A stretch of DNA of 45,312 bases from Octopus bimaculoides (GCF_001194135.2 NC_069006.1:9612697-9658008); one strand, 5' to 3'; numbered from the stretch's first letter, positions 9,022 to 35,579 are shown. Translations and numbers: made by a program. Notes: generated by a model from the sequence alone, not told the origin.

Positions 9022-9083
9022 CATCATTGGACAGCTTCAGTTTCTTTGAACTCTCATCTTGGCTTGTCACTTCTGTGTTGGGC
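9022..9083 (-). CDS. Host gene exon (basic linker): (R)PNTEVTSQDESSKKLKLSND
   Basis: (CT)n tract with TAG acceptor and GTGAGT donor. Phase 2 in and phase 1 out, matching the upstream exon. Confidence 0.75.
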
Positions 9084-9454
9084 CTATCACAATAAGTGAG
9101 AGAGAGAGAGAGAGAATTAGAAAGGAACATTAATTTTTGAGAGGTTATCCTTATATATAGTGGACGTACATCGATTAGGGATTAGTGTTTCGGATTCATG
9201 ATTGTGTGTTGTGTTCTTGAGCAAGACACTTCATTCTACGTTGCTCCAGCCCACTCAGCTGGCAAAACTGAGCATTCCTGTGATGGACCGGTATCCCGTC
9301 ATGGTGGGTGGGGGAGTATATACCCTACACCCCACAAAATACAGAAAACTGATCTTATAGAGCCTATGGTTTGGCAAGGATCTTTCAACCCTTTCCGAAG
9401 CATGTATATACACATGTATATCTTGTGCATATATGCATGTATACATGAGTGCAT

Positions 9455-9692
9455 GTGGGTGTGTTATTTCTTTACTACCTACAAGGGGCTATACACGGAG
9501 GGGACAAACAAGGACAGACAAACGGATTAAGTTGATTATATCGACTCCAGTGCATAACTGGTACTTATTTAATCAACCCCGAGAGGATGAAAGGCAAAGT
9601 CGACCTTGGCGGAATTTGAACTCAGAACATAAAGACAGACGAAATACTGCTAAGCATTTCGCCCGGCGTGCTAATGTTTCTGCCAGCTCGCT
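9455..9692 (-). mobile_element. tRNA-derived SINE family 'B'
   Basis: Head GCGAGCTGGCAGAAAC...CTGAGTTCAAATTCCGCC. Copies at 22986, 28461, 35620, 38085 and 38320. Confidence 0.85.
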
Positions 9693-11096
9693 GCATTGTG
9701 TGTATGTATGTATATATATGTGAAGGCGTATGGTTTATTGGTTAGGGGTGTTGGGACTCATGACTAAGATTGTGGTTTCAATTCCTGGATTGGGTGATAT
9801 GTTGTATTCTTGAGCAAGACACTTCATTTCACACAGCTCTGGTCCCCTCGGCTGGTAAAAATTTGCAACTCCCAAGATGGACCAGGGTCCCATCCAGGGA
9901 GGAATATATACACAAAAGAAACCAGGCAACTGGGCCTATGCTCCTTAAGGAGTAATGTGGACTATTCACCATCACACATATACCCTTCCTCATGCTGTTG
10001 ATGCTACTTAGCATTGGCCAGTCATTCATCATTTTATCTCCCCAGGGTGGGGATGTGTGTCTTTGTCTTTTATCATATTACTTGTTTCAGAAGAACAGGG
10101 TGGGGTGGGGAGAGGAAGGATTAACTCTTCAGCATTCAGATTACTCTGTCAGATTACTCTGCACAAAGGTGCAGGCATGGCAGTGTGGTAAGAAGCTTGC
10201 TTCCTAATCACATGGTCCTGGGTTCAGTCCCACTGTGTGGCACCTTGGGCAAGTGTCTTCTACTATAGCCTCAGATTAAACAAAGCCTTGTGAGTGGATT
10301 TGATAGGCGGAAACTGAAAGAAGCTTATCATATATACATATATATATTGTTGCTTTCTCAGAAAATGAATAAATGGTTTCACCATTCTATTTCTTTTTAC
10401 ATTAGCAACAGTTTCAGCTTAATAATAATACTTTGTTGGGTGCAAAAAATCGTAACTCCATGCATGTATGATATTTTCAGTCAGAAATATTTTTGCAAAA
10501 CTGTCGTATGCAGGACTTACTACAATTTTGAAAAATGCTAAACTGTTGTACTACACTTTGACAATTTTCATAGATTGGCATCTGAAGCAGTTGGAGATGG
10601 GATAGTTTGACCAAAAGAACCGGCTATTGCAAGCGAAATTAAATATTGGAAAAAACACATTTGGACATACGACAGTTTAACATAACAGCAACGATTTGTA
10701 TATATATTTATGTGTGTCTTTGTGTCCGTGTTTGTTCCCCCACCATCACTTGACAACTGATGTTGGTGCGTTTATGTCACTGTAACTTAGCGGTTTGGCA
10801 AAAGAGACAAACAGAAGTACTAGGTTTACAAAGAATAAGTCCTGGGGTTGATATCTTTGACTTTAGGACAGTGCTCCAGCATGGCTCCTGCTGGAACAAG
10901 TAAAAGAATAAAAAAATTGTCTTGAATTTGTCATACATTATCTCGTAGCTTTGAGATTTTAATGATGCGATTGTATATTTCTGGAATGACATTGTAGGAT
11001 AGGTGCAAGTGGCCTGATCTGTCCAGTTTAAACATAGAACAGGAAGAATATTTGGGCCTGAAATGGCCAGTTTGAATAGTAAAGGGTTCATCTTAC

Positions 11097-11240
11097 CTTT
11101 TGGTGTGAGTGTAAATGGAGCGAGGTAGACGGAAGAGGATCGAAGTGCCACGGAATTTCAGGTTGCCAACGGCTACCAGAAAATTGTTGAGAGGAATACT
11201 GGAATGGTGTACATCGGTTTTGTCATCATCATGAAACAAC
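11097..11240 (-). CDS. Host gene exon: (K)LFHDDDKTDVHHSSIPLNNFLVAVGNLKFRGTSILFRLPRSIYTHTK
   Basis: CAG acceptor and GTAAGA donor, 144 nt, phase 2/2, open in the required frame. Confidence 0.85.
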
Positions 11241-12121
11241 CTGAAGTTGGCAAATCATCATCATCATTATAAATGATTAAAATTTATAACAGGGTGAGAG
11301 AGATGTGAGGTTGTGATGGTCATGCATTTATCTGTGAAGGTTATCATTTGGTGATGGAATTGAAATGTAGCATGGATAAAGTGTTGGTCAAGCTATATGT
11401 AGATCAGTGGTCCACTGTGTTATTGCTACAGAGCCTAGGTTCCACCAGGAATGGGGACAAGACAAGAAAAAGTCAAGGTCAAGATTTGTCACTTGTCCCC
11501 ATGATTTTATCTGCCTCTCATTTTTCTCACCCCTACCCATGCATTTTTGCAATCCCACCCCATCCCCACCTTCCCTGATTCTTCTGGCTTCACTCATCAG
11601 CATCGTTTTCCATCCATGTTCCATGCTGGCATGGGTTGGCTGTTTTAATAGGACGCAATGGGTCTAAGGCCTGCATCATGCTGCAGGGATTACTTTGGTA
11701 TGATTTCTATAGCTGGAAGCCCTTCTTAATCCCAACCGTTTTACGGAGTGTACTGGCACCATTCTCTTGATACCAACACTAATGAAGTTGCCATGAAGGG
11801 GGAAACTTTATACTGGGAGAATAAGGAGCTTAGAGGGGGAAAGTATGAGAGGAAAGGGCCAGAGCAGACTCACATTTTTGAAGAGAGGGTGGTGAAAAAG
11901 TGATAAAAATGTGTTGATGGGGGAATATTTCTTCTGTGTGGAGTTCGTGAGTTGTGTATGTTCAACGTTCATGTTCAGAGAAAGAAGCTATCCTGGTTGG
12001 GTGGTGCTTCCTCTTTGTACATATGTAAATGTAATAACATGGGATACAAAAAGATGGACCAAAATTATAAAGGCAGACAAGATGATGACAAAAGAAATTT
12101 AATTAAAGAATTTTCGTTTAC

Positions 12122-12205
12122 TTGATATTTTCATCGACAGTTTTGTCTATGGAATCTGGGTGACAGGGCAAACCTTTGATATTCATGATGTCAATCACCA
12201 TATTC
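12122..12205 (-). CDS. Host gene exon: (R)NMVIDIMNIKGLPCHPDSIDKTVDENI
   Basis: Long pyrimidine tract with CCAG acceptor and GTAAAC donor, 84 nt, phase 2/2. It continues the EF-hand exiting helix. Confidence 0.85.
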
Positions 12206-12236
12206 CTGGAAGAAAGAAAGAATGAGATAGATAAAT

Positions 12237-12297
<61 letters not shown>
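12237..12297. repeat. (GA)n microsatellite
   Basis: Directly visible. On the minus strand it is a pyrimidine tract near the 12205 acceptor. Confidence 0.95.
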
Positions 12298-12300
<3 letters not shown>

Positions 12301-12707
12301 GAGAAAATGTCTTCAGTAACAACAACAATACTAATTACTTAGAATTTAGATTTCACAGCATTTATATTTTACTTTTCAAAGTTATCTCTACAGATTTTCT
12401 GTACAAATTAGAGCCAACACAGAAAGTTACAAGATTTCATATACAAATACATCTACGTAAACAATGCAATTGAAGATAGAAAAAAAAAAAGGTAATTAGG
12501 GCATGGGTGTATCTGNNNNNNNNNNNNNNNNNNNNNNNNNNNNNNNNNNNNNNNNNNNNNNNNNNNNNNNNNNNNNNNNNNNNNNNNNNNNNNNNNNNNN
12601 NNNNNNNNNNNNNNNNNNNNNNNNNNNNNNNNNNNNNCTGGATCCAATTTCTATAAAAAATTTACAACTGCTAACAAAAGTGTGGTACAGTATTTACTTA
12701 TAAGCAT

Positions 12708-12936
12708 TTAATCCTTTTGTTACCCTATTTCTGTTGAGATGATCTGTGTTTCTTTCAATTACTTTAAATATAACAAAGAATTTAGTAAAATAACTCAGTT
12801 ATCATCAAGCTAGTGTTAGGAACATAAATTGTGACTAAGGTTTGGTGGAAGATTTTAATTCAGAACTTATGAAATCAAGACATTTGTACGACAGAGCCAG
12901 AGGTGGTTTCAGCCAGGTTGGTATTGAAAGGGTTAA
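12708..12936 (+). mobile_element. piggyBac-like MITE, single copy
   Basis: TTAA at both ends and (C)CCTTTT...AAAGGG termini. Same family as the arrays at 23865 and 40471. Confidence 0.75.
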
Positions 12937-13140
12937 CATACTTGGCAATTTTGGTTTCAAATTCTGGCCCAAGTTCAGCAAGTTAGGGGGAAGGGCTGAG
13001 TCAATTAAAATTGATCCCCAGTGTACAACTGGTACTTATTTCATCAACCGTGAAAGGATGAAAGGTAAAGTCAGTCCCAGTGGCATTTGAACTTGGCAGT
13101 GTTTTGTGCTCATGAGCAAAAAACACTTCATTTCACATTG

Positions 13141-13343
13141 CTCCAGTCCACTCAGCTGTAAAGAGGTACCAACCTGGTAGCTGAGAAGTTTAACCCTGTG
13201 GCTGACTGATATCCCATTTGGTGGAGAGGAGTGTTGTACCCTCATGCACCGCAGGAACTGAGTTACATTCTGAACCTTGTGATTCCTGGAGTTCACAACA
13301 GGCATAAGCCTAATTCTCCTGAAGAAGGTCTCCTTCATTTCAC
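13141..13343 (-). mobile_element. Young SINE-like segment, inverted twin of 19154-19356
   Basis: 203 bp with one mismatch to the reverse complement of 19154-19356 (my manual alignment). Confidence 0.8.
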
Positions 13344-13392
13344 CCTACTCTAGTCCCCTCTAACGATTCTGCTAGCTTGCTGCCTTAATATA

Positions 13393-15006
13393 CGAGGCAA
13401 AGTTAAAAGTTATCTGCACTTCCGCCATAACATATCTTTATTATTGTCGTACTACCTTCTGTGTGGAGGTGCAATGGCCCTGTGGTTAGGGCAGCAGATT
13501 CGCGGTCATAGGATCACGGTTTTGATTCCCAGACCGGGCGTTGTGAGTGTTTATTGAGCGAAAACACCTAAAAGCTCTATGAGGCTCCGGCAGGGGATGG
13601 TGGCTAACCCTGCTGTACTCTTTCACCACAACTTTCTCTCACTCTTACTTCCTGTTTCTGTTGTGCCTGTAATTCAAAGGGTCAGCCTTGTCACACTCTG
13701 TGTCACGCTGAATCTCCCTGAGAACTATGTTAAGGGTACACGTGTCTGTGGAGTGCTCAGCCACTTGCACGTTAATTTCACGAGCAGGCTGTTCTGTTGA
13801 TCGGATCAACTGGAACCCTCGACGTCATAAGCGACGGAGTGCCAACAACAACAACTACCTTCTGTGCATGCAGGCCTACAGTTGGTACTATAGGGGTCAT
13901 GTGATTGAAGTTTGAGCCTGATCGTGCCATTTTTGTTTCTGGCTTTACAGCATAAGCACGGCCACTCCACTAGCAATGTGCACCAAAGAAGAACAAAGAG
14001 CAGTGATCCGAGAGATGGTTATAGTGAACTGGTTCACCATTACCATCTCTCGAGCTTGCTGAATCTTCTCATCAGTGTTGGAGGTTGACGGGCATCCTGT
14101 TCCCCATTTGTACATCATGCTTGTCTGGCTTCAGTTTGTTGGCCAGCAAAGCACTGTATCTTGCTCTGTTGATCATACACCCCTTTTTCAGGTAGTCTTC
14201 CAGTATAGACCATTTTGACCCCAAAAAAGGGTTAGCATCACCTTTTCCATAGAAGACTGAGTTTTTGAATTTCTTCGTTGCTGGCAAGCCAGGATGTTCC
14301 TACTCCATACTCTGTCTTTTGGATTCCGCCTTATAATGATGGTCCCATGTTTCATCTCCTGTGACTATTCTACTAAAAAATTCCTCACCCTCATTGTTGT
14401 AGTGATCGAGTAAACGTTGGCAGACTTCATGACGTTGGTGCTTGTGCTCTGCAGTAAGCTCTCTTGGTACCCATCTTGCACAGACTTTATGGAAGCTGAA
14501 TTCATCTTGGATGATTTGATAGGTAGAACCAGAACTAATCTGCAGAGAACCAGGACTACCTTATCGACGATAACTCACCAGTTCACCATTACCATCTCTC
14601 GAGCTTGTTGAATCTTCTCATCAGTGGTGGAGGTTGACGAACATCCTGTTCCCTATTTGTACATCATGCTTGTCCGGCCACTTTTAACGTTCTCAATTCA
14701 CTCATACACACTTCTATGCAGTCAGTGCCCATATTGTACTAAAAGTGTCCAATGAACTTCAGCACCTGACACCTTCTGACCAGAGAAATCAGATATCACC
14801 ATTCTTTGTTCTTCTTTGGTGCACATTGCTAGTGGAGCAGCCATGCTTACACTGTAAAACCAGAAAGAAAAATGGTGCGATCAGGCTCAAACTTCAATCA
14901 CGTGACCACTATACTACCAACTATAAGAATGTGTGCACAGAAGGCAGTGTGGCAATAATGAAGATATGTTATGACAAAAGTACAGATAATTTTTGTCTGT
15001 CCCTCG
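13393..15006 (-). mobile_element. Rearranged fold-back mariner with two 5' ends
   Basis: TA|CGAGG...CCTCG|TA ends and inverted arms of about 215 bp. Broken transposase on minus shows KVCARWVPRELT, IVTGDETW and KVMLTLFW motifs. Confidence 0.85.
13464..13853 (+). mobile_element. tRNA-derived SINE family 'D', full length, nested in the mariner arm
   Basis: tRNA-like head, (AAC)n tail and 13-bp TSD ACTACCTTCTGTG at 13451-13463 and 13854-13866. Confidence 0.9.
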
Positions 15007-15739
15007 TATGTGGTAGTGTATTAAGGTTGCTAAATTAATTGCCAGCAATTAATTTATATTTTACTACTAAAGATACATGAGTAGACTCAACTAAACTATA
15101 TCATAGGTTATCATCAGTATTATATCTCCTGTCCTCCTTGTCGTCATCATCCTCATCATTGTCTTTGTCATCATCAATACTAGCATCATCAACATTATAT
15201 CTTCCCTCCTCCTCCTTGTTGTCATCATCACCATCATCATCATTGTCATCATGAACACTATCATCACCGTCATCCTAATAACCTTCATCCTAATAACCAT
15301 CATCATTGTTGTCATTTTAATGTGCACTTTCCCATGCATGGATGGGTCACACAGAATTTGTGGAGGCAGATTTTCTACAGCTGGATGCCCTTCCTGTCAC
15401 CAACCCTCACCTGTTTCCAAGCAACGTAATATTCCCCCTTGGCCAGACATATTTTCTACAAAAGACTAGAAATAAAGGGACACAGCTGACTGAGTGATAC
15501 TCATTTACACCTTTCACACAATGTCAAGACAAGGAGTCAGCAACACATGCACACACACACACACTACAGGCTTCTTTCAGTTTCCATCAATCATATATAC
15601 TCACAAGGCTTTGGGTCAGCCCAGGGCTGTAGTAGAAGTCAGTTGCTTAAGGGCCATACATACAGGTTGTCTTTGCAGATAGGCATGTCGCTGGCATCCT
15701 TCTTCTGCTCAGCGATCCTAATTTTGTGGGACCGTGGCT

Positions 15740-15950
15740 GCTGGTGTCAGGTAAAACGCATCTGTACTGATGCTACATATAGGCACCTGTGCCGGTGCTG
15801 TGTGCATGCACCTGATGCACAGGAAGGACATCCAGCTGTAGAAACCAGGCCAAATCAGACTGAAACCTGGTGCAGCTCTCCGGCTTGCCAGCTCTGATCA
15901 AACTGTCCAACCCATGCCAGCATGGATAATGGATGTTAAATGACGATGAT
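15740..15950 (+). mobile_element. SINE family 'C' 3' part with (GAT)n tail
   Basis: AGGACATCCAGCTGTAGAAAC...CCAACCCATGCCAGCATGGA...GATGATGAT. Related pieces lie near 11590, 17395, 25120, 26340, 28860, 29535, 32270, 35130, 42045 and 43350. Confidence 0.75.
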
Positions 15951-16313
15951 GGGGATTGGGATGATAATAACGATGATGATGATAATGGTGATGATGATAA
16001 TAATGATGATGATGGTGATGATGACGATGATGATCATGTGCTTCCAAAGCAGGTTTCTTAACCACATAGCTATACTATAATAAACAGTAATCCTTTCTAC
16101 TTGAGGCACAAAGCCTGAAATTTTATGGGGCTGGAGCGCCAGTGTTCAATTCGTACTTCTTTTATTGACCACTGAAAGGACGAAAAGCAAAGTCAACCTC
16201 AAGAGAATTTGAGTCAAGAACATGGTGAATTGGGAAGGGATCTAAAAAAACATGTTGGGTGTTGAAAAAATACCCAAATCAAAATCTGAAAAACAAGTGA
16301 TAAAGGTATTTAC

Positions 16314-16487
16314 CGAAATTCAGAAGGCTCCAGAAATCCTTCTTTGTGAGAACTGTAGAAGCGGAAAATATATTTGCAGCGAATTTCAGCAGAACCACCA
16401 CCATGGTTTGTATGAGGATCAAGAGCTGCCAAACCAATGTAGAAATGTTTGAAGGAAAGAAATTTCTTTCTGCCAACATCAAAAGCC
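16314..16487 (-). CDS. Host gene exon with two degenerate EF-hands: AFDVGRKKFLSFKHFYIGLAALDPHTNHGGGSAEIRCKYIFRFYSSHKEGFLEPSEF
   Basis: (CTT)n-CAG acceptor and GTAAAT donor, 174 nt, phase 2/2. Spacing fits F-x-x-F-D...L-S-F and I-F-R-F-Y...G-F-L...E-F. Confidence 0.9.
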
Positions 16488-16555
16488 CTGAAGAAGAAGA
16501 ACAAAGAAAGGAACACTTATAAACATATATATATATAAAAATTCTATAATTATAG

Positions 16556-16975
16556 GCGCAGGAGTGGCTGTGTGGTAAGTAGCTTGCTTACCAACTATAT
16601 GGTTCCGGGTTCATTCCCACTGCGTGGCACTTTGGGCAAGTGTCTCCTACTATAGCCTCAGGCCGACCAAAGCCTTGTGAGTGGATTTGGTAGACGGAAA
16701 CTGAAAGAAGCCCATCGTATATATGTATATATTTATATGTATGTGTGTGTGTATACGTTTGTGTATCTGTATTTGTCCCCCACCAGCATTGCTTGACAAC
16801 CGATGGTGGTGTATTTACGTTCCCGTAACTTAGCGGTTCGGCATATGAGACCGATAGAATAAGTACTAGGCTTTCAAAGAATAAGTCCTGGGGTCGATTT
16901 GCTCGACTAAAGGCGGTGCTCCAGCATGGCAACAGTCAAATGACTGAAACAAGTAAAAGAGTATAAAAGAGTAAA
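16556..16975 (+). mobile_element. SINE family A, full length, near consensus
   Basis: Complete head-to-tail match to the other copies. Confidence 0.9.
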
Positions 16976-16980
16976 GAGTA

Positions 16981-18633: not shown

Positions 18634-18673
<40 letters not shown>

Positions 18674-19591: not shown

Positions 19592-19715
19592 CTGAAGAGA
19601 TCGTCCATACGCTCGAGAGAACCACCTTTCTGTAGAATGTAGCGAGAGAAGGCTGCCTTACACATTAACATGGATGGATAACTGAAGTTTAGGAACTCCC
19701 GTAGAATTAATTGTT
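19592..19715 (-). CDS. Host gene exon: (E)QLILREFLNFSYPSMLMCKAAFSRYILQKGGSLERMDDLF(R)
   Basis: Pyrimidine tract with TTCAG acceptor and AG|GTAGAG donor, 124 nt, phase 1/2. It joins 16487 to give ...DDLFR-AFD.... Confidence 0.88.
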
Positions 19716-21445: not shown

Positions 21446-22761
21446 TCAGGTTATCCTATAAGTTCTGTCTGATTTTACCTTTTTTAAAATTGAATGAAAT
21501 TTAATAGTATTTTAGAATGTCTAATAGAATTAAAAATTATTTTTATGCATTCATGTACATTTAAACTAATAAAATATAATTTTACAGAATAATAGAATTA
21601 AAATTTCTCTGATTAAAACCCTTTCTAACATGGAAGTATCCAAAGAGCATTTGAGGCACATAATGCTTTATGAGTACAAAAAAGGAAACTCTGCAGCTGA
21701 AGCGACTCGAAACATACACTCAGTTTATGGGAAAGAATGCTTGAATGAAAGAACTTGCAGAAGATGGTTTGCAAAATTCAGAAGTGGAGATTTCAGCCTT
21801 GAAGATGAAGATTAAACAGGATGTCCAGTTGAGTTTGATGATAAGCTCCTTGAGGCATCACTTGAAGAAAATCCTGCATTATCAGTTGAAGAATTGGCAA
21901 AAAAGCTTAGTTCAAACTATACAACTGTTCATCGTCATCTTCAACAACTTAGAAAGGTTCCTAAACTTGGAAAATGGGTGCCTCATGAATTGTCTGAAAG
22001 CAACCACAAATCCTGAGTTGACATCTGCTCTTCTCTCCATTCATGCAAACTCATTTCACCCTTTTTGGATAGACTTGTGACTGGTGACGAAAAATGGATC
22101 TTCTATTGAAATGTTAAACGTCGTAAACAGTGGCTTGGTAAAAGGGAAAAAGTTCAACCACAACCAAGAAGGGAACTTCATGGGAAAAAAGTTCTTCTCT
22201 CTATCTGGTGAGATTGCAAAGGAGTAATTCACTTTGAATTGTTACCACCTAATGCAACAATCAATGTTCAAGTCTACTGTCAGCAATTAGAGCATTTGAA
22301 CCAAGCTTTGAAGAAAAAAAAAACCCGCCTTAGTGAATCGTAAACGAGTGATGCTTCATCAGGACAATGCACAACCCCACACTGCAAAGATCACGTCACA
22401 GAAGATCAAAGAGTTTGGTTGGGAAAAAATTCTTCATCCACCTTATTCTCCCAACCTTGCTCCTTCAGACTACCACTTATTTCATAGTTTACAGAATCAT
22501 TTGCGGGACATAACCTTCGCAAGCCAGGAGGAGGTCGAAACAGACATTTCAGAATTCTTCGCTTTGAAACCAAAAGAGTTTTACATTGATGGGATTAAAA
22601 AGCTTGTAAGGTGATGGTGATGATGATGACCAACCTATAGATGGAAGGAAGTCATAGATAATCAGGGAAAGTACATTGATGATTAAATTTCAATTAAATA
22701 TAACATTTGATCACTTGTTTTCTTTATTCAAAATTCGGACAGAACTTATGGGGTGATCTGA
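21446..22761 (+). mobile_element. Full-length mariner (D,D34D), 1316 bp, inactive
   Basis: Imperfect TIRs of about 30 bp (TCAGGTTATCCTATAAGTTCTGTC.../...GACAGAACTTATGGGGTGATCTGA) and TA TSDs at 21444-45 and 22762-63. Confidence 0.95.
21630..22686 (+). pseudogene. Mariner transposase pseudogene
   Basis: HTH region, WVPHEL, VTGDEKW, HQDNAQPH and YSPNLAPSDYHLF motifs. Several in-frame stops, a frameshift in the A-run near 22320 and an insertion of about 27 bp near 22610. Confidence 0.95.
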
Positions 22762-23200: not shown

Positions 23201-23243
23201 AGTAGATATTATTCGTACCTCAAAGGACTCCCTCAGTTCCCAC

Positions 23244-26615: not shown

Positions 26616-27455
26616 TGAGGGGTGGGGGTGTATCCCAAAGTAACTGGAAATAGTCTTTGTGAGACCAGCCTGTTGTAGTTCAGGCTTCCACAGCTAGAAG
26701 CCACTTGATGCAACCCTCAGGCATCAGCCTGGCAACAGGTATCATTGTGCAGGATCATACTGCCATGTGGTGCATCTTTATTTTGCAGTGCTTCTCCCTT
26801 GTTTGTCGATTTTTTGTGAAGGGACAGTGTGCTTCCACGATATTCTGTTTCCCTGCTGGGGAAAATGATAGCTGACACAGTTGTCATGCTTCAAACAGCT
26901 TACACAGCCACTGCCATGAGCAAAATACAAGTTTACGAGTGGTTTTCACACTTCAGGAATGGTCACTTGCTGCTTGAGGACCAACCTCGTTCAGAGCAAC
27001 CGTCAACTTCCCAAACGAATGAAAACATCATGGAAATTCATGAACTAATCGTGGAAGGCCATCACCAAACTATTGACATGATTGGTGTGCCCTGGAGCTT
27101 CTGTCAATGAATTTTGAGGGAGGAACTGCGAAGAGTTGCAGCAAAACCTGTGCCTCGCTTGCTCACAGAAGATCAAAAGCAGCCATGACTGAATGCATGT
27201 CGTGAACTGAAAGAAGAGTTGGAAATTGATCTGGTCCTTTTTTTGAAGGTCATTACTGCTGATGAAAGCTGATGCTATGGGATTTGCAGATGTGGAAGAG
27301 GTGAAGAAAAGAACGATTGAGGCGTTAAAAGGCTTCACTTTTCAAGAGTTCCAGCACTGTTTCAAACGGTAGAAAATACACCTGGACCAATGCATTGCTT
27401 CAAATGGAGAATACTTTGAAGGAGATAAAAGTGTAAATGTAAAACTTAGTGAATA
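26616..27455 (+). mobile_element. Internally deleted mariner
   Basis: TA|TGAGGGG 5' end, QVYEWFSHFRNG...EDQPRS, PVPRLLTEDQK and VITADES, jumping to FADVEEVK...CIASNGEYFEGD. The 3' TIR was not seen. Confidence 0.85.
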
Positions 27456-28460
27456 AAATAACATTATAAAAGAGGATGTATAATAGAAAACGAGGATGAA
27501 AATGTTTGAAAAAAATTAAAACAAATTGTAAAAATGTCTTAACTGTTTTAATACCAACCCACCTTTGACTGCCCTTGTTTCTATGATATAAACATTCCTG
27601 GTTTAAAGTGATCTAAATTAAAACCTTCCATCAAAATTTCATTTTAATTTATGTTCCAAACACCAGATTAATCCTTTCATTACTGTATTTATTTTGAGAT
27701 GCTCTGTGTTTCTTTCAATTACNNNNNNNNNNNNNNNNNNNNNNNNNNNNNNNNNNNNNNNNNNNNNNNNNNNNNNNNNNNNNNNNNNNNNNNNNNNNNN
27801 NNNNNNNNNNNNNNNNNNNNNNNNNNNNNNNNNNNNNNNNNNNNNNNNNNNNNNNNNNNNNNNNNNNNNNNNNNNNNNNNNNNNNNNNNNNNNNNNNNNN
27901 NNNNNNNNNNNNNNNNNNNNNNNNNNNNNNNNNNNNNNNNNNNNNNNNNNNNNNNNNNNNNNNNNNNNNNNNNNNNNNNNNNNNNNNNNNNNNNNNNNNN
28001 NNNNNNNNNNNNNNNNNNNNNNNNNNNNNNNNNNNNNNNNNNNNNNNNNNNNNNNNNNNNNNNNNNNNNNNNNNNNNNNNNNNNNNNNNNNNNNNNNNNN
28101 NNNNNNNNNNNNNNNNNNNNNNNNNNNNNNNNNNNNNNNNNNNNNNNNNNNNNNNNNNNNNNNNNNNNNNNNNNNNNNNNNNNNNNNNNNNNNNNNNNNN
28201 NNNNNNNNNNNNNNNNNNNNNNNNNNNNNNNNNNNNNCTATGGAAGCATTGCTGCCTGGAAGAAATATGGATAAAGAAATCATTATTCAAAAACCAAAGT
28301 CATGTGAATGGATTTGGTAGATGGAAACTGGAAGAAGCCTGCCACATATATATATGTGTTTATGTGTGTGTGTGATTGTATATATATACATATACATATA
28401 GGTGCAGTTGTGGATGTGTGGTAAGAAGCTTGCTCCCCAACTACATGGTTCTGGGTTCAG

Positions 28461-28690
28461 AAGGCGGCGAGCTGGCAGAAACGTTAGCACGCCGAGCAAA
28501 ATGCTTAGCGATATTTCGTCTGTCGTTACGTTCTGAGTTCAAATTCCGCTGAGGTCGACTTTGCCTTTCATCCTTTTGGGGTCAATTAAATAAGTACCAG
28601 TTACGCACTGGGGTCGATATAATCGAATTAATCCATTTGTCTGTCCTTGTCCCCTCTGTGTGTAGCCCCTTGTCGATTGTAAAGAAATAA
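28461..28690 (+). mobile_element. SINE family B nested in a SINE A head
   Basis: 14-bp TSD GGTTCTGGGTTCAG at 28447-28460 and 28694-28707. Confidence 0.9.
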
Positions 28691-28818
28691 CACGGTTCTG
28701 GGTTCAGTCCCACTGTGTGGAACCTTGAGCAAGTGTCTTCTACTATCATCTTGGGCTGACCAAAGTCTTGTGGGTGGATTTGGTAGACAGAAACTAAAAG
28801 AAGCCCATTGTATATGTA

Positions 28819-28861
<43 letters not shown>

Positions 28862-29126
28862 TCATCATAATTTAGTGTCTGCTTTCCATGCTGGCATGGG
28901 TTGGTTGGTTTGACTGAAACTGGTAAACTGCACCAAGTTCCAGTCTGATTTAGCTTGGTTTCTATGGCTGGGTGCCCTTCCTAATGCCAACCACTTCAAG
29001 AGTGTAACGGCTGCTTTTTACATGTTACCAGCACGGGTACCATTTACATGACACTGATAATAGCCACAACTACAGTTTTGGTTCAATATAGAAAACTTTA
29101 GTAGCACTGAAATGATTTGAACCTAC

Positions 29127-29211
29127 TCTTTGAAATCTTTACTGAGGACTAAGTCCGTGGGGTAATGGGCGGTTGTAAGAGGAATCCAGGTTAGATACCA
29201 ATCTCTCCACC
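29127..29211 (-). CDS. Tentative host gene exon: (G)WRDWYLTWIPLTTAHYPTDLVLSKDFK
   Basis: CTTCTGTCTTCAG acceptor and GTAGGT donor, open in the phase-1 frame required by 33548. However, its acceptor region is repeated at 33880-33939. Confidence 0.4.
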
Positions 29212-30122
29212 CTGAAGACAGAAGCTGGATTTACTGTATTGTTTATATGCATCCACTACTGATTGCATATTCTTGACTATTTGCAAACTACATCTGCCAA
29301 CACTACAACATAATTCTGAGCCCCCAGAAACAGCTGTCGGATCTGTAATACCATACCTTCCACCCTTAGTTTTCTCTGTTTTTGCACTCTGTATAAATTT
29401 GTTCTGTTAATGTATACCTATATATTTATACATGAATGTTCATCGTCTGGATATTTTCAGTCTTTGTCTTCTCTTTAGGTATATTTTATATATCTGGTTC
29501 ATTTGTTTATTTTCATGATTATCTCTTTCTCCATATCATCATCATCGTTGTCATTTAACATTCTATTTCCATACTGGCATGGGTTGGATGGTTTGAGTGA
29601 GGACTAGCAAGCCAGGAAGCTGCACCAGGTTCCAATCTGATCTGGCAGTGTTTCTACAGCTGGATGCCCTTCCTAACACCAACCACTCAGAGAGTGTAGT
29701 GGATGTTTTTACGTGCCACCGGCATGGGAACCAGTCAGGTGGCACTACCATCAACCACACTCAAATGGTACTTTTTACATGCCACCAGCATGGGTGCCAG
29801 TCAGGCAGCACTGGTATCGGCCATGCTTCAATGGTGCTTTTTACGTGCCACTAGCACAGATGGTGGTCAGGTGGCATAGGCATTGGCCACGACTACAATT
29901 TCACTTGGTTCAACAGGTCATCACAAGCATGGCATATTGCCCAATGATTGAAGGGTGCTTTTAAATAGGCCAGTTATGCAACACTGGCATCGGCCATATA
30001 TATATATATATATATANNNNNNNNNNNNNNNNNNNNNNNNNNNNNNNNNNNNNNNNNNNNNNNNNNNNNNNNNNNNNNNNNNNNNNNNNNNNNNNNNNNN
30101 NNNNNNNNNNNNNNNNNNNNNN

Positions 30123-30790
30123 AGTATAGAGTAAATGATTTTGCAAAGGTGTTTGAGGTGGCAGGGACATTTGGTAAGGATGAATGATGAGCGACTGCCC
30201 AAGCAGCTGTTGTATGGTGAGCTGGAAGATGGCAGGAGACCAGTACATAAGCCTAAACTAAGGTTTAAGGATTGCCTTAAAAATGCTCTAGTACAGACAG
30301 GAATTGCAGCTGGTGATTGGGAGAGGGAGGCACAAGACCGCGATGGATGGAGGAAGATAGTGCATGATGGTTGTTCAAGGTTTGAGAGGGAGAGAGTGAA
30401 GTATGAGAGAATTAGGAGGGGGCTTAGAAGGGGGGAACCTGTGGAAAGTGAGAGAGTGTTGTATTTTGTGGGAGGAGGTGTTTGAGTCATGCAGGCCTGG
30501 TGAGCCATCAATAATCAAACAGAAATCAACCCATGATAAACAGTGATGTGGCTATTAAAATTCATGACAGAACATGTGTAAAATGTGGAAGGGTGTTCCT
30601 CTCAGCTAGAGGTCTGAAAAGACACGTTAAGAGAGTGCATATGATGGCACCTGTTTCTCCTGCCAGCCAGCACAGTTATCTAGCGTGTAATAAAATGTGT
30701 AAAAGCTTGGCCGGGCTTAAAAGTCAAATAAGGGCATCACGTGGCAACAATCATGAAACATTTCAGTAAGTCTTCTTGGCAATGGCTTTT
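30123..30790 (+). mobile_element. RTE-clade (BovB-like) LINE 3' end
   Basis: RWQGHLVRMNDERLPKQLLYGEL..GRRP...PKLRFKD...W...AQDR..WR, followed by C2H2-like motifs (CVKCGRVF...GLKRH). Confidence 0.9.
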
Positions 30791-31591
30791 CTCATGTAAC
30801 GAGGATGCAGCTGTGATGTATGTATGTGTGTGTATGTATGCCTGTATGTGTGTATATGTGTATGTATGTGTGTACGTATGTATGCATGCGTGTATATATG
30901 TGTGTATGCATATGTGTATGTATGTATGAGTGTGTATATGTGTGTATGTTTGTGTGTGTGTGTGTGTGAATGCAAGTGTATGGTTGTGTCTTGTTTTGAC
31001 CTCTGCTACTGTTGTAAATGAATGTCGTTCAGTTCAAGTATTCAGTGAAGTCATGTCTGTCCATGGAGAAATATCACCTTTCTTAGAAAGAAGTGAGGGT
31101 TGGCAACAGGAAGGGCATCCAGCTGTAGAAAATCCAGCCTCAACAAATCCCAATGGACCCATGCAAGTATGGAAAAGTGGATGTTAAAATGATAATGATG
31201 TTGAAGATCATACAACTGGTACTCTGTTGCTTATGATGGCAGTGAGGGTTCCAGTTGATCAAACAACCGAACAGACTGCTCGTAAAATTAATGTGCAAGT
31301 GGCTGAGCACTCCACAGGCATGTGCACCCTCAGTGTAGTTCTCAGGGAGATTCAGAGTGATATGGAGGGTGACAAGGCTGGCCCCTTTGAAATAAAGGGA
31401 CAGCTCATTTTTGCCAGCTTAATGGACTAGAGAAATGTGAAATAAAGTGTCTTGCTCAAGGACACAATGCGTCACCAGGAATTAAACTCCCGACCTTACA
31501 ATTGTGAGCCGAATGCCCTACCCACTGAGCCACACACCTTCACTGATAATACATTCATATGCACACACATACTCATATATATTTATCTTAC

Positions 31592-31706
31592 AAAGTAAAC
31601 AAACAAAATTTGTTTTAGAAGCGTTGAGATGTATTGAAAGATAGAGAAATAATTTATCTTTCAATACATCTCATCGCTTCTAAAACAAACTTTGTTTGTT
31701 TACTTT
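31592..31706. repeat. 52-bp near-perfect inverted repeat with 11-nt loop
   Basis: 31592-31643 versus 31655-31706, 50 of 52 positions complementary. Confidence 0.9.
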
Positions 31707-31785
31707 CATCGTAAGTTGAATTTAATGTTAGCGTCTTATGAAGCTAAATTTATAAGTTCTAAAATTGCAGAAGAATTCGCTACTG

Positions 31786-31857
31786 GGCAGTTTAGCTTAA
31801 TGGTAAAGCACTTGACGTGTAATCACAGGGATGTGAGTTCAAGTCTCACAGCTGGCC
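31786..31857 (+). tRNA. tRNA-Thr(TGT)-like sequence, probably a pseudogene or repeat-derived
   Basis: 72-nt cloverleaf with D stem GCTT/AAGC, perfect T arm GTGAG-TTCAAGT-CTCAC and anticodon loop CGTGTAA. The acceptor stem pairs 6/7 and the anticodon stem only 3/5. Confidence 0.5.
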
Positions 31858-33547
31858 GGTAGCATATTTTTCTGCAATGCATGGATAATTTATCCTGATC
31901 ACGCTATTTATTAGCATTATCACGCGTTTTATATATATTTATATATGTAGGCATGTTTGTGTATGTATATTGTTGTTTTGATGTTGCGCGATGGTCGTAG
32001 AAAAGTGTTACCATCATACGGTTAGTGTTACTTGTTTCCAACCTTGTCTGGCCATGGAGAAATATTACCTTGCTTGGAAACAAGAAGGACATCCGACTGT
32101 AATAAATCTGCCTTGATCAATTCCCTCATGCAAAAATAGATGTCAAATGAAGATTGTTATGGGAAAATCTTGAACACTCCCATGTGACCGAAGCTGGACT
32201 GACCGATCACAATATAGAACAGAAGACCCATCAAGCTGAGCAAAATTGCAGTCATGGCAGATACCGGTGTTTAACAAATTGGCACTCGTGCCGGTAGCAT
32301 GTAGAAGCATCCATTACACTCTCAGAGTGGTTGGCATTAGGAAGGGCATCCAGCCGTACAAAACCATGCCAAATCAGACTGGAGTTTCATGCAGCCTTCC
32401 AGCTTACCAGCCCTGGTCAAACCATCTGACCCATGTCAGCATGGACAATAGGTATTAAATGATGTTGATGAAGAACTGAGTGAACTCTCAGGTGGGGGTA
32501 CTTGACAATCTTAGTTTGACTGTGTTGATCAAACAGTTGGTAGTTAAACAGTGAATGCTGAGTATCTAAGTTCGAGTAATATGGAGTGCATTCTGTGTTA
32601 ATATACATTTCTGTGATAGGTTATTTTTAAATAACCACAACCAAGTATTTATTTGTGTAATACCATTTTACACCAGATGTGTACGCCCATGTCATAACAA
32701 TATTGTTGATGTAAAACCTCTTGGAGTGAATAAAATACCAGAAACTACTTGTAGGACTTGAACCTACACATCTAACAACATTACAACATAATTCTGAGCC
32801 CCCAGAAACAGCTGTCGGACCTGTAATAACATACCTTCTCCCTTTAGTTTTCTGTGTTTTTATACTCTATATAAATCTGCTCTGCTAATATATAAATATC
32901 AGTCAGCCTTTGATCTTTTTTTGTTGTTTTCCACCAAAGGATTTCTTTTAGCTTTTAGCAGGAATATTTAGCAGACCACTGCTGTATCTGATGTCTCAGG
33001 ATTCGCTAGAATAATAGCCCCACATCATGGAAAGAATCTGAGCAAAGGAGACTTTGCATGGAACTGGCTTAAATAACCATTTCATCTTTTGGCATGCTTC
33101 TTTCTGAGCACAACCATCCCTATATACTCAGCACAGAGCTCAAAGACATTGGACAGCAGCCAACCCATGTTCACAACACAAAAGCAATGAACAGATGGTG
33201 AATGAGAGATATTAGAAGACAACCAGCAGCTAACCACAATGGACAACTGGTGACAGCAACACACAATGACCAGTTAACATTCTGACTGCTACTGGGCAAT
33301 CACCCTCAATCCAAGAACAATAATATTAAAACTCTTTCGATGTTTTGTCATTTGTAGTCATGGCAACATTTTACTTTTTTAACAAAAAAATAAATATTTT
33401 GTTATCAAAAATCTCAACAGATATCTGTGTTTTTCTTTTATCGTAACAACCCTAATGTACAGGACATGTTAATTGTTATAGCTGTATTCATTTTGAGAGA
33501 CACAGTTAAAATGACTTGCACAAATTATTAGATTTAGTTGGAAATAC

Positions 33548-33662
33548 CTTTAAGATTTTCAATCAAATGTAATGGTTCAGGTCCCAGGAGACACAGATCA
33601 TCGGATGAAATGTCATTTCGAAGCTCTTCTAGACTGAACCACTGAAGAATGTCATCGGGAGA
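33548..33662 (-). CDS. Host gene exon: SPDDILQWFSLEELRNDISSDDLCLLGPEPLHLIENLK(G)
   Basis: Very strong pyrimidine tract with TTTCAG acceptor and AG|GTATTT donor, 115 nt, phase 0/1. Confidence 0.8.
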
Positions 33663-34117
33663 CTGAAAGCAGAGAGACAGAAGAAAAATAAAAGCAAAAT
33701 CAGTCCCCCCCCTACACACACACACATAAGAGAATCGGTTTTGGATTGAATTGTAGTTTTTTAAAACTTTTTTGACAAATTTAATTAGAATACCATACTG
33801 ATTTCAACAATTTCTTGTTTTTCAATGATAACTAAAAAAAAAAAAGTTTTAAAGAAATTGCAGATAGAGGAGAGAACTGTAGTGGATGTATATAAACATT
33901 ACGGTAAATCCAGCCTCCATCTTCAGGGTGGAGAGATTGCTTGGAGAGACAAGGCACATTATGTAAACCTTCTTAGCCATGTGTCTCCAGAGCAAGAAAC
34001 TCTTAGTAGCTCATATCCTTATACTGAGTATATTAAATGATATTTATCTCTCACTGGATGGAGTACATTTTTTGTTGATCTCATCTTAACAGAACAATAA
34101 AGTATATATGTATATAC

Positions 34118-34513
34118 TTTTACTCTTTTACTTGTTTCAGTCATTTGACTGCGGCCATGCTGGAGCACTGCCTTTATAGTTGAGCAAATCGACCCCAGAG
34201 CTTATTCTTTGTAAGCCTAATACTTATTCTATTGATCTCTTTTGGCGAACTGCTAAGTTACGGGGACGTAAACACACCAGCATGTTGGGGGGTCAAACAC
34301 AGACACACAAACATATATACACACATACATATATAGATATACATATATATGACGGGTTCCTTTCATTTTCCGTCTACCAAATCCACTCACAAGGCTTTGG
34401 TCAACCCAAGGCTATAGTAGAAGACACTTGCCCAAGGTGCCACGCAATGGGACTGAACCCAGAACCATGTAGTTCGTAAGCAAGCTACTTACCACACAGC
34501 CACTCCTACGCCT
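34118..34513 (-). mobile_element. SINE family A, near full length
   Basis: Reverse complement of 16556-16975. Confidence 0.9.
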
Positions 34514-34516
34514 AAC

Positions 34517-34547
<31 letters not shown>

Positions 34548-34753
34548 TACACACATACATACAAACATAACAGGCTTCTTTACCATTTCCATCAACCAAT
34601 TTTCACTCACAAGGCTTTGGTCAGCCCATGGCTATAGCAGAAGACACTTGCCCAAGGTACCATGCAATGGGACTGAACCTGAAATCATGTGGTTGAGAAG
34701 CAAGCCTGTCCACCACACAACCACACCTATACTGTATCAATATAATTTCACAT

Positions 34754-35105
34754 AGGCGATCTTTCGGTACGAGTTCCTAAATATCGGCCTTTTCCGTAAC
34801 ACCCTCACGATCTTCACTACGGTGTTAGGGTTAGGGTTTTAGTGTCAGGGTTACGGTTTTAGGGTTAGGGTTACGGTTAGGGACGGAATTCCCTAGCGCA
34901 AACCCTAACCGTAAACCTAACCCTAACCCTAACTCTAAACCCTTCAAAATAAATCGTGCTCTATGTATGTCTTTCGCTGTTATGACATTGTTTCCCTGTT
35001 TCTCTCCAACACTTCTTATGGAAAAGGCTGATCTTTGGTAAAGATTGCCAAAGACACTTTTATGGAAAAGGCCGATAATTAGGAACTTGTACCGAAAGAT
35101 CGCCT
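34754..35105. mobile_element. TIR element with internal inverted telomeric-like repeats
   Basis: 46-bp TIRs (43/46). (TTAGGG)-like units at 34824-34882 face (CCCTAA)-like units at 34892-34943 across GAATTC. Confidence 0.75.
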
Positions 35106-35438
35106 TCACACAAAATACACCCATCGTCATTATCATCATTGTCGTTCAATGTCTGTTTTCCATGCTGGCATGGGTTGGACGGTTTGACTGAGGACTGGTA
35201 AGCCAGAAGGCTGCACTAGGCTCCAATCTGATTTGGCAGAATTTCTACAGCTGGATGCTCTTTCAAACGCCAACCACTCCGAGAGTAGTGGTTTGCATTA
35301 CACATGAGATATTTACTTGAAAATCATTCATGATTAATGTCAGCTTAAGAGAGAAGGAAAGAAGAGAAAGGTGAGCAGATGAGAAAAGCTGAAAGGCAAT
35401 AAATGAAGAAGTAGTGGCTGTCATCCAGCGCTACTCAC

Positions 35439-35579
35439 TGATGTTGTGAGAATGTCTGAGTCACTGGAGTCGTCAATGGCTGTGGTGTGGAATATGAAGT
35501 GGGTAGAGACAGGCAAGTTTTCCAGTCTGCGGATGTAAGTGTGGACCACACCGACGACCTGCACAACTGAGCCAATGTA
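35439..35579 (-). CDS. Host gene exon (Nudix-like): YIGSVVQVVGVVHTYIRRLENLPVSTHFIFHTTAIDDSSDSDILTTS
   Basis: TTTTCTGTTTCAG acceptor and GTGAGT donor, 141 nt, phase 0/0, matching the phase-0 start of 33662. Confidence 0.78.

What the first reader, a model, noticed from the sequence alone, without database searches (positions are those of the whole stretch)
9022..35579. Spliced minus-strand gene missed by the ORF track: Nudix-like, EF-hand and probably PPP phosphatase fusion protein
Seen: seven exons with canonical splice sites are open in phase-compatible frames. 35439-35579 joins 33548-33662, and 19592-19715 joins 16314-16487, 12122-12205, 11097-11240 and 9022-9083 in turn, giving ...QWFSLEEL...LLGPEP...EFLNFSYPS...LFRAFD...GLAALDP.T.HGG.SAEIRCKYIFRFY...VGNLKFRGTSILFR...KKLKLS. 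Recollection, not a search result: these motifs resemble an uncharacterised invertebrate family usually auto-annotated as PP1/BSL-like Ser/Thr phosphatase, with a C-terminal PPP domain that would lie in gaps or left of this window. Inference: a Nudix-fold sensor plus EF-hands plus a phosphatase would be a poorly described nucleotide- or Ca-coupled signalling module.
Basis: partly seen in the sequence, partly recalled or inferred. Interest (0 to 1): 0.75.

Follow-up and report, generated by a model that had tools for sequence, protein, structure and literature searches.

The report
Octopus Nudix-fold, EF-hand, PPP phosphatase gene
The seven proposed exons are real and form the front half of an octopus gene for an uncharacterised invertebrate protein phosphatase with a dead Nudix-like domain and a calcium-sensor-like domain; the gene is already partly annotated and its phosphatase half lies outside this window.

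Summary
All seven minus-strand exons have AG/GT borders and concatenate to one 281-codon open frame. That frame is 94.7% identical to residues 57-373 of a 787-aa Octopus vulgaris protein ('PP1 isozyme 1-like'). Exon lengths and splice positions match in both species.

The window is Octopus bimaculoides. RefSeq already holds a truncated 255-aa model (LOC106883514) that uses five of the seven exons.

One further 36-codon exon begins at 28255 and runs into assembly gap 27723-28237. The first coding exon lies right of the window. The ten linker and phosphatase exons are absent: orthology with O. vulgaris stops at the 100-N gap 7727-7826.

Full-length relatives (about 760-910 aa, from corals to echinoderms) carry three parts:
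- an N-terminal domain that folds as Nudix (pLDDT 86; top 50 PDB matches all Nudix) but lacks the catalytic REx2EE residues;
- a calcineurin-B-like/NCS-like EF-hand domain;
- a C-terminal PPP catalytic domain with all catalytic motifs.

In octopus the one normally canonical EF-hand loop is degenerate. No paper describing the family was found. This is a correct gene call in an uncharacterised family, of moderate interest. The sensor function remains inference.

The parts
35439..35579 (-). Coding exon 2 (O. vulgaris aa 57-103): central strands of the Nudix-fold domain
   Evidence: AG/GT borders. tblastn to P0170 E=1.7e-16. Same 141-nt length and splice sites in L002 25086-25226.
33548..33662 (-). 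Coding exon 3 (aa 104-141): C-terminal part of the Nudix-fold domain (W..S.EEL...LLGPEP motif)
   Evidence: E=3.5e-18. Matches L002 26879-26993, same 115-nt length.
28238..28255 (-). First 18 nt of coding exon 4 (aa 142-177, linker with the SAKF motif). The rest is lost in assembly gap 27723-28237.
   Evidence: GSNASI is 100% matched at 28256-28239. The acceptor ttcttccag and exon start are identical to O. vulgaris.
19592..19715 (-). Coding exon 5 (aa 178-219): start of the EF-hand domain
   Evidence: E=1e-19. Matches L002 28603-28726. Also present in RefSeq model P0001.
16314..16487 (-). Coding exon 6 (aa 219-277): FRAFD, the invariant GLAALDP.T.HGG..E.RC.YIFRFY block and the EF3 loop (SSHKEGFLEPSE in octopus)
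   Evidence: E=3e-33. Family HMM E=9e-24. Pfam EF-hand_6 hit. Loop conservation.
12122..12205 (-). Coding exon 7 (aa 277-305)
   Evidence: E=1.8e-12. Matches L002 31339-31422.
11097..11240 (-). Coding exon 8 (aa 305-352): end of the EF-hand domain with the nearly invariant LKFRGTS.LFR motif
   Evidence: E=3e-25. Family HMM E=9e-10. Conservation.
9022..9083 (-). Coding exon 9 (aa 353-373): basic KKLKLS stretch in a predicted disordered linker. The donor G|GTGAGT at 9022/9021 is used in O. vulgaris.
   Evidence: The RefSeq model instead reads through the donor to a TGA at 8972-8970.
26761..26887 (-). Alternative first exon of RefSeq XP_014790029.1 (MTTVSAIIF...). It is doubtful: not conserved, and antisense to a mariner-like element.
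   Evidence: tblastn of P0001. Sequence and donor. It overlaps a Mos1 HTH_48 ORF on the + strand. No unique match in O. vulgaris.
7727..7826 (.). 100-N scaffold gap where collinearity with the O. vulgaris gene ends. Exons 10-19 (linker and PPP domain) are missing beyond it.
   Evidence: The last unique anchor is 7850-8019, matching L002 35823-35654. Nothing unique lies left of the gap. No PPP hit anywhere in the window.

Best explanation
The window holds coding exons 2-9 (exon 4 mostly lost in a gap) of the Octopus bimaculoides orthologue of a 19-exon, 787-aa O. vulgaris gene. The family is an ancient, uncharacterised metazoan PPP-type Ser/Thr phosphatase family.

Shown:
- The protein begins with a Nudix-fold domain that has lost the REx2EE metal-binding and catalytic residues.
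- A four-EF-hand-type domain most like calcineurin B-like and NCS proteins follows.
- Then comes a disordered basic linker, a conserved YELATH.VKV / SFNQRSHPNEMLTGLRYFER segment, and a PPP catalytic domain with every catalytic motif intact.

Inferred mechanism:
- The C-terminal domain is an active phosphoprotein phosphatase.
- The two N-terminal modules regulate or target it in cis. The EF-hand module would play the role that the separate B subunit plays for calcineurin, with Ca2+ binding at the single canonical EF3 loop in most phyla.
- The non-catalytic Nudix fold would act as a ligand-binding or protein-binding module.
- In octopus the EF3 loop is degenerate, so Ca2+ control may be weak or lost there.

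The truncated RefSeq model (255 aa) is an assembly-gap artefact, not a different protein.
For: Gene structure and orthology:
- AG/GT borders and a single open frame.
- P0170 covers 100% of the query.
- 94.7% identity with a single exon-sized deletion.
- identical exon lengths and splice sites.
- collinear DNA anchors.
- dN/dS 0.29.

Architecture:
- the N+EF profile hits 76 representative proteins at E<=1e-30; of 10 long homologues scanned, 9 carry a C-terminal Metallophos domain (E 1e-26 to 1e-32) and 9 also score EF-hand Pfam hits.
- family alignment.
- PPP ORFs follow the N+EF ORF on one strand in an unrelated contig.

Nudix fold. Loss of the Nudix box is shown (E becomes L/I; EE becomes K/Q plus I/V/L).

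EF-hand domain. EF3 is canonical in 33-37 of 39 members but reads SSHKEG..E in octopus.

PPP catalytic residues: GDxHGN, GDYVDRG, RGNHE, HGG, RG and RAHE are invariant or at least 90% conserved. The domain superposes on PP1 at TM 0.88-0.91. It is equally distant from calcineurin A, BSU1 and PP1 by sequence (E 1e-42 to 1e-45).
Against: - The PPP exons, exon 1 and most of exon 4 are not in this window. Continuity of the O. bimaculoides gene beyond gap 7727-7826 therefore rests on orthology only.
- No RNA evidence could be examined.
- No O. bimaculoides PPP fragment was found in the protein collection.
- The regulatory mechanism is inference. The full-length model has pTM 0.52, so domain packing cannot be read.
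- Matches to single-chain calcineurin fusions have rmsd 23-29 A.
- The octopus EF3 loop lacks the ligands at loop positions 1 and 3. Pfam EF-hand_6 scores 24.2 bits, just under its 25-bit cutoff.
Confidence: 0.8

Rival explanations
1. The O. bimaculoides locus encodes only a short Nudix-fold/EF-hand protein, or an EF-hand-only isoform, without a phosphatase domain. This could be a truncated duplicate or a genuine short isoform that ends by read-through of the exon 9 donor, as in RefSeq XP_014790029.1.
For: - The RefSeq model ends at a TGA 50 nt past the donor.
- A 395-aa Mytilus edulis entry (P0002) also stops soon after the EF-hand domain.
- No PPP exon lies in the 9 kb left of exon 9.
- No O. 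bimaculoides PPP fragment was retrieved.
Against: - The donor G|GTGAGT and its position are conserved with O. vulgaris, where it is spliced to exon 10.
- Collinearity runs up to a 100-N scaffold gap and then stops abruptly. That pattern points to missing assembly rather than a gene end.
- The same Mytilus species also has an 820-aa full-length entry (P0159).
- The RefSeq 5' exon is antisense to a mariner fragment and is not conserved.
Confidence: 0.1
2. The protein is a bifunctional enzyme: an active Nudix pyrophosphohydrolase fused to a protein phosphatase.
For: The fold is confidently Nudix. The closest structures are active enzymes such as NUDT12, NudJ, MutT and NUDT18.
Against: The Nudix box GX5EX7REUXEEXGU is not kept. 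Across the family members whose N-domain aligns (about 24-25 of 39 rows at these columns), the E of RE is L or I, and the EE pair is K/Q plus I/V/L. In octopus the stretch reads RIMNKY. Pfam's Nudix model does not hit any member.
Confidence: 0.05
3. The two exons at 33-35 kb belong to a different, upstream gene, and the EF-hand exons start a separate gene.
For: About 14 kb and several assembly gaps separate the two exon groups. RefSeq starts its model at 26887.
Against: - The O. vulgaris gene product contains both groups, with exon 4 between them.
- Exon 4's start is present at 28255 in the right phase.
- The N-domain and the EF-hand domain lie in one protein in molluscs, brachiopod, nemertean, priapulid, echinoderm and others.
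Confidence: 0.02

Closest known systems
Octopus vulgaris 'serine/threonine-protein phosphatase PP1 isozyme 1-like' (P0170, 787 aa; OX597839.1) and its invertebrate orthologues (Mytilus LOC143075052, Lingula LOC106179994, Lytechinus 'pef-1-like', etc.)
   Same: It is the orthologue: 94.7% identity over the window's exons, with identical exon lengths and splice sites. All family-invariant motifs in the EF-hand domain are present.
   Different: The window lacks exon 1, most of exon 4 and exons 10-19. The O. bimaculoides RefSeq model is a 255-aa fragment. The introns are about 2.6 times longer than in O. vulgaris.
Calcineurin (PPP3 catalytic A subunit plus EF-hand B subunit)
   Same: Both pair a PPP catalytic domain with a four-EF-hand regulatory module. 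The EF-hand part is most like calcineurin B-like and NCS proteins. The catalytic part matches calcineurin A at E about 1e-42. The best whole-model Foldseek hits are engineered single-chain CNB-CNA fusions.
   Different: - Here the EF-hand module is fused in cis, N-terminal to the catalytic domain.
- Only one loop (EF3) is canonical, against four in CNB.
- No calmodulin-binding or autoinhibitory tail was identified.
- There is an extra Nudix-fold domain.
- The spatial arrangement is not comparable (rmsd 23-29 A).
PPEF / RdgC (PPP7), 'protein phosphatase with EF-hands'
   Same: Both are single polypeptides that combine a PPP domain with EF-hands. One source names a family member 'pef-1-like'.
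   Different: From established knowledge, PPEF has an N-terminal IQ motif and C-terminal EF-hands. Here the order is reversed, no IQ motif was seen, and a Nudix-fold domain is present.
BSU1/BSL (PPKL) Kelch phosphatases and PP1
   Same: Several sources name members 'BSU1' or 'PP1 isozyme'. BSU1 (9tp7) and PP1 are among the best sequence matches of the catalytic domain (E about 1e-44 to 1e-45). PP1 superposes at TM about 0.9.
   Different: There is no Kelch domain. The catalytic domain is no closer to PP1 or BSU1 than to calcineurin. The motif after the last strand is SSSRYCGGSNEAAC rather than PP1's SAPNYC (the PP1 motif is from memory).
Non-catalytic Nudix-fold domains (TRPM2 NUDT9-H, NrtR, CFIm25/NUDT21, mitoribosomal mL46; recalled from the literature)
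   Same: A Nudix fold with a degenerate Nudix box used for binding rather than hydrolysis. NrtR and mL46 appear among the matches.
   Different: No ligand is known or predictable here. Fusion of such a domain to a protein phosphatase was not found in the searched literature.

Membership tests
Nudix-fold / EF-hand / PPP orthologous family (O. vulgaris P0170 type) | EF-hand domain with the family-invariant motifs FRAFD, GLAAL.P.T.HGG..E.RC.Y.FR.Y and LKFRGTS.LFR | tested here: met
   All are present in window exons 16314-16487 and 11097-11240. The columns are invariant across the family. Family HMM E=9e-24 and 9e-10.
Nudix-fold / EF-hand / PPP orthologous family (O. vulgaris P0170 type) | N-terminal Nudix-fold domain | tested here: met
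   The window encodes aa 57-141 of the domain, including W111 and the LLGPEP motif. The fold was shown on the orthologue's residues 1-150. The first 56 residues (exon 1) are outside the window.
Nudix-fold / EF-hand / PPP orthologous family (O. vulgaris P0170 type) | C-terminal PPP catalytic domain in the same polypeptide | tested here: inconclusive
   It is present in the O. vulgaris orthologue and in 9 of 10 long homologues. It is absent from the window, and orthologous DNA ends at gap 7727-7826.
Nudix hydrolase superfamily (enzymes) | Nudix alpha/beta/alpha sandwich fold | tested here: met
   AF2 pLDDT 86.3 and pTM 0.81. The top 50 Foldseek PDB hits are all Nudix, probability 1.0. The top profile hits are Nudix.
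Nudix hydrolase superfamily (enzymes) | Nudix box GX5EX7REUXEEXGU with catalytic glutamates | tested here: not met
   The RE and EE positions are K/R-L/I and K/Q-I/V/L in the family, and R-I and K-Y in octopus. It is therefore Nudix-fold only, not filed as a hydrolase.
EF-hand Ca2+-binding proteins (NCS / calcineurin B-like type) | EF-hand helix-loop-helix domain detectable by profile | tested here: met
   For the window protein, Pfam EF-hand_6 scores E=2.2e-5 and 24.2 bits, just under the 25-bit cutoff. Orthologues pass, e.g. P0002 at 33.2 bits. PDB matches CBL4 at E=8e-5, plus KChIP and NCS-1.
EF-hand Ca2+-binding proteins (NCS / calcineurin B-like type) | Canonical 12-residue loop D-x-[DN]-x-[DN]-G-x-[ILV]-x-x-x-E | tested here: not met
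   The octopus EF3 loop reads S-S-H-K-E-G-F-L-E-P-S-E. The EF2 loop is non-canonical in the whole family (R/K at position 5). Most other phyla keep a canonical EF3. Ca2+ binding by the octopus protein is therefore unproven.
PPEF/RdgC (PPP7) | Domain order IQ motif, then PPP domain, then C-terminal EF-hands | tested here: not met
   In family members the EF-hands lie at about residues 215-345 and Metallophos at about residues 515-760.
BSU1/BSL (PPKL) | N-terminal Kelch-repeat domain | tested here: not met
   No Kelch Pfam hit in any of 13 members scanned. The N-terminus is a Nudix fold.
PP1 catalytic subunit (the name given by the source) | Catalytic domain specifically closest to PP1; a stand-alone protein of about 320-330 aa | tested here: not met
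   The catalytic domain scores equally against calcineurin A, BSU1 and PP1 (E 1e-42 to 1e-45). The protein is 787 aa with two extra domains.

The most novel reading that the evidence does not exclude
The catalytically dead Nudix fold is a small-molecule sensor (for a nucleotide, an ADP-ribose-like ligand or a cap-like ligand). Together with the EF-hand module it gates the fused PPP domain. That would define a new second-messenger-controlled protein phosphatase class, ancient in animals (cnidarians to echinoderms and tunicates) and apparently absent from vertebrates.
Probability: 0.15. Interest if true: 0.75.

Novelty: new variant of a known kind. Interest (0 to 1): 0.4.

Why it matters
PPP phosphatases are usually regulated by separate subunits. 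Characterised exceptions with fused regulatory domains are few: PP5 with TPR repeats, PPEF with EF-hands and BSU1 with Kelch repeats.

This family would add a further fused architecture: a pseudo-Nudix fold plus a calcineurin-B-like EF-hand module placed in front of an intact catalytic domain. It is conserved from corals to echinoderms. Databases label it inconsistently (PP1, PP2A, PP2B, BSU1, pef-1-like, uncharacterised). Pfam does not recognise its N-domain.

Recognising the architecture gives two things. It gives a testable hypothesis of Ca2+- and/or ligand-gated dephosphorylation in invertebrates. It also corrects the truncated O. bimaculoides gene model.

For this window itself the result is an ordinary, correct eukaryotic gene call.

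Tried and rejected
1. PPP exons in the window. I ran tblastn with 65 long homologues, a 58-sequence family HMM against all six-frame segments, and low-stringency tblastn with O. vulgaris residues 374-787. Nothing was found.

2. Exon 1 (aa 1-55). It is not in the window. The right end of the window maps inside intron 1.

3. The rest of the O. bimaculoides gene. XP_014790029.1 is not on record in the contig index. The third homologue search, with the PPP half, returned no O. bimaculoides protein.

4. The GTAATT just after gap 27723-28237 as a possible exon 4 donor. Rejected: it does not align with the O. vulgaris donor region.

5. Pfam on family members. It never reports Nudix. The fold was seen only by a profile-versus-PDB search and by structure prediction.

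6. Domain packing in the full-length AlphaFold2 model. pTM is 0.52 and the linkers 357-395 and 416-453 are disordered. Foldseek hits to calcineurin fusions have rmsd 23-29 A. The packing is not interpretable.

7. Literature. Five topical searches and one locus-id search found no paper on this family. Chen, Dixon and Manning 2017 (the phosphatome classification) is not held, so I cannot exclude that it already names this subfamily.

Full report
**Source and observation**

The window is Octopus bimaculoides genomic DNA (39% G+C, 15 assembly gaps).

Each of the seven intervals in the finding is bordered on the minus strand by AG upstream and GT downstream. Together (844 nt) they give one open frame of 281 codons. 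The other two frames are closed many times.

**Proof that the exons are real**

An alignment-based homologue search returned a 787-aa Octopus vulgaris protein (P0170, 'PP1 isozyme 1-like') that covers 100% of the 281 residues.

- A pairwise alignment gives 266/281 identities. The single indel is a 36-residue deletion.
- I fetched the O. vulgaris locus (L002, OX597839.1) and mapped its 19 coding exons.
- The seven window exons correspond to O. vulgaris exons 2, 3, 5, 6, 7, 8 and 9. Lengths are identical (141, 115, 124, 174, 84, 144, 62 nt) and AG/GT lie at the homologous positions.
- Exon DNA is 96.1% identical, with dN/dS 0.29 (16 synonymous and 17 non-synonymous differences). That indicates a gene under purifying selection.
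- Unique DNA anchors between the window and L002 are collinear and inverted as expected. They cluster around the exons.

**Gaps (the scan program's caution)**

No gap cuts any of the seven exons. Order and orientation across every gap agree with O. vulgaris.

One gap matters. The 36 residues missing from the concatenation are O. vulgaris exon 4 (aa 142-177). Its acceptor (ttcttccag) and first 18 bases (split codon G|GC, then SNASI) are present at 28255-28238. They are identical to O. vulgaris. The sequence then runs into gap 27723-28237. The exon is 108 nt and phase 1 to phase 1, so leaving it out keeps the frame.

**What is missing from the window**

- Exon 1 (aa 1-56, which carries the degenerate Nudix box) is absent. 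The right end of the window (44635-45312) maps to L002 20004-20650, inside the roughly 15-kb first intron. Exon 1 therefore lies further right.
- On the left, the last unique anchor is 7850-8019, matching L002 35654-35823. That point lies about 0.4 kb past exon 9 and 1.3 kb before exon 10 in O. vulgaris.
- Left of the 100-N gap 7727-7826, nothing matches uniquely to 26 kb of downstream O. vulgaris sequence.
- No exon 10-19 sequence was found by tblastn or by a family HMM.
- The phosphatase half is therefore not in the window. Whether window 1-7726 is a large repeat-rich insertion in intron 9 or a scaffold misjoin cannot be decided here.

**The existing annotation**

XP_014790029.1 (255 aa) uses exons 5-9 and reads through the exon 9 donor (G|GTGAGT) to a TGA at 8972-8970.

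It starts in a private first exon, 26761-26887. That exon lies antisense over a mariner-like ORF (Mos1 HTH_48) and has no unique match in the O. vulgaris locus L002.

The model looks like an assembly-limited fragment. The gene is thus partly annotated, not wholly missed.

**The family**

An exhaustive profile search with the N-terminal and EF-hand part found 925 representative proteins at E<=1e-3 and 76 at E<=1e-30. Many are 650-950 aa long.

- Nine of ten long ones carry Pfam Metallophos at about residues 515-760 (E 1e-26 to 1e-32), and nine of the ten score EF-hand Pfam hits at about residues 215-345.
- Named members come from bivalves, gastropods, cephalopods, a brachiopod, a nemertean, an annelid, a priapulid, a tardigrade, chelicerates, myriapods, crustaceans, beetles, moths, rotifers, echinoderms, a hemichordate, a tunicate and corals.
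- No vertebrate entry appeared among the listed hits.
- Source names are inconsistent: uncharacterized, PP1 isozyme, PP2A-like, 2B catalytic subunit, BSU1, pef-1-like.
- In an unrelated ENA contig, the N+EF ORF is followed on the same strand by ORFs encoding GDLHGN, DYVDRG, HGG and RAHE.

**N-terminal domain**

Pfam sees nothing there. Other evidence points clearly to a Nudix fold.

- A 21-sequence profile of the domain puts Nudix proteins in the first three places of a PDB sequence search (3id9 E=0.0018, NudJ 0.0038, NUDT18 0.012). More Nudix entries follow below.
- AlphaFold2 on O. vulgaris residues 1-150 gives pLDDT 86.3 and pTM 0.81.
- All 50 best Foldseek PDB matches are Nudix hydrolases (probability 1.0, TM up to 0.69).
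- The Nudix box is degenerate. Where Nudix enzymes have R-E-U-x-E-E, the family has K/R-L/I-L/V-x-K/Q-I/V/L, and octopus has R-I-M-N-K-Y.

This is a Nudix fold that is very probably not a hydrolase.

**EF-hand domain**

The closest solved relatives are plant calcineurin B-like proteins (E 8e-5), KChIPs, NCS-1 and, weakly, calcineurin B.

- Within the family only the third loop is canonical. Across 39 members the counts are D 33, N/D 33, D 35, G 28 and E 37.
- Octopus has S-S-H-K-E-G-F-L-E-P-S-E, and another cephalopod-like sequence has N-A-M-G-D-G. Canonical Ca2+ coordination is doubtful in cephalopods.
- H247, E253, R255 and C256 (T.HGG..E.RC) and S338 are invariant. R335, G336 and T337 of the RGTS motif are at least 90% conserved. 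These are candidate intramolecular contact or phospho-regulatory elements. That is inference only.

**Catalytic domain (outside the window)**

- GDxHGN, GDYVDRG, RGNHE, HGG, RG and RAHE are invariant or at least 90% conserved. An active enzyme is expected.
- The domain is equally distant from calcineurin A, BSU1 and PP1 (E 1e-42 to 1e-45). It superposes on PP1 at TM about 0.9.
- It therefore looks like a separate PPP lineage, not a PP1 isozyme. A proper phylogeny was not done.

**Mechanism**

Shown: the three-module architecture, loss of the Nudix catalytic residues, retention of the PPP catalytic residues, and one canonical EF loop in most phyla.

Inferred: the N-terminal modules regulate or target the phosphatase in cis. 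This would resemble calcineurin B acting on calcineurin A, or the TPR domain acting on PP5.

The full-length model (pLDDT 82.2, pTM 0.52, disordered linkers at 357-395 and 416-453) does not allow the packing to be read. The best whole-model matches are engineered single-chain CNB-CNA fusions. They share domain order but not geometry (rmsd 23-29 A).

**Novelty**

I found no paper on this architecture in the held library. The main phosphatome classification paper is not held, so prior naming of the subfamily cannot be excluded.

The sequences themselves are in public databases.

**Verdict**

The exon call and family assignment are correct, and the gene is already partly annotated. The protein belongs to an uncharacterised and structurally distinctive PPP subfamily. 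Interest is moderate.

Noticed in passing
window 22333-22614 (+) and 26829-27110 (+): Mariner/Tc1-type transposase fragments lie inside introns (Pfam DDE_3 E=6e-6; Mos1 HTH_48 E=1e-4). The second lies antisense under the RefSeq model's private first exon, 26761-26887.
   Followed up: partly
window 31785-31858 (+): A tRNA-Tyr(GTA)-like sequence found by ARAGORN and Rfam, at only 42.8 bits. It sits in the intron between exons 3 and 4 on the opposite strand. It may be a tRNA-derived repeat or pseudogene rather than a working tRNA gene.
   Followed up: no
window 27-412, 952-1284, 8589-8837, 10162-10347, 34313-34728, 41647-42026 and others: An interspersed repeat of about 400 bp has many copies in the window and dozens in the O. 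vulgaris locus (75-93% identity). It is often next to (TA/TATG)n microsatellites and to assembly gaps.
   Followed up: no
window 40486-41270: A tandem array with a period of about 250 bp. It matches similar arrays in O. vulgaris intron 1 (L002 16989-17700 and 23454-24304).
   Followed up: no
window 30135-30485 (+): A 116-aa ORF (…RLPKQLLYGELEDGRRPVHKPKLRFKDCLK…) resembles, from memory, the C-terminal tail of non-LTR retrotransposon reverse transcriptases. It has no Pfam hit.
   Followed up: partly
window 9022-35579 versus L002 25086-35220: Exons 2-9 span 26.6 kb here but 10.1 kb in O. vulgaris. The exon 3 to exon 4 distance is 5.3 kb here against 0.2 kb there. Either introns have expanded markedly through repeats or the local assembly is inflated.
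   Followed up: partly
window 1-7726: This stretch has no unique similarity to the 26 kb of O. vulgaris sequence downstream of exon 9; only repeats match. It is either a large lineage-specific insertion in intron 9 or a scaffold misjoin at the 100-N gap 7727-7826.
   Followed up: partly
window 16314-16487 (EF3 loop); P0170 and P0174: Cephalopod members have lost the canonical ligands of the only conserved Ca2+-binding loop (SSHKEG..E; NAMGDG..E). By contrast, 33-37 of 39 family members keep D-x-N/D-x-D-G...E.
   Followed up: partly
L001 3450-6232 (+): An ENA metagenome contig from a small-intron animal encodes a family member as consecutive ORFs: N+EF as one 460-aa ORF, then PPP pieces. Neighbouring genes carry SNF transporter, ankyrin/SOCS-box and bZIP domains.
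   Followed up: no
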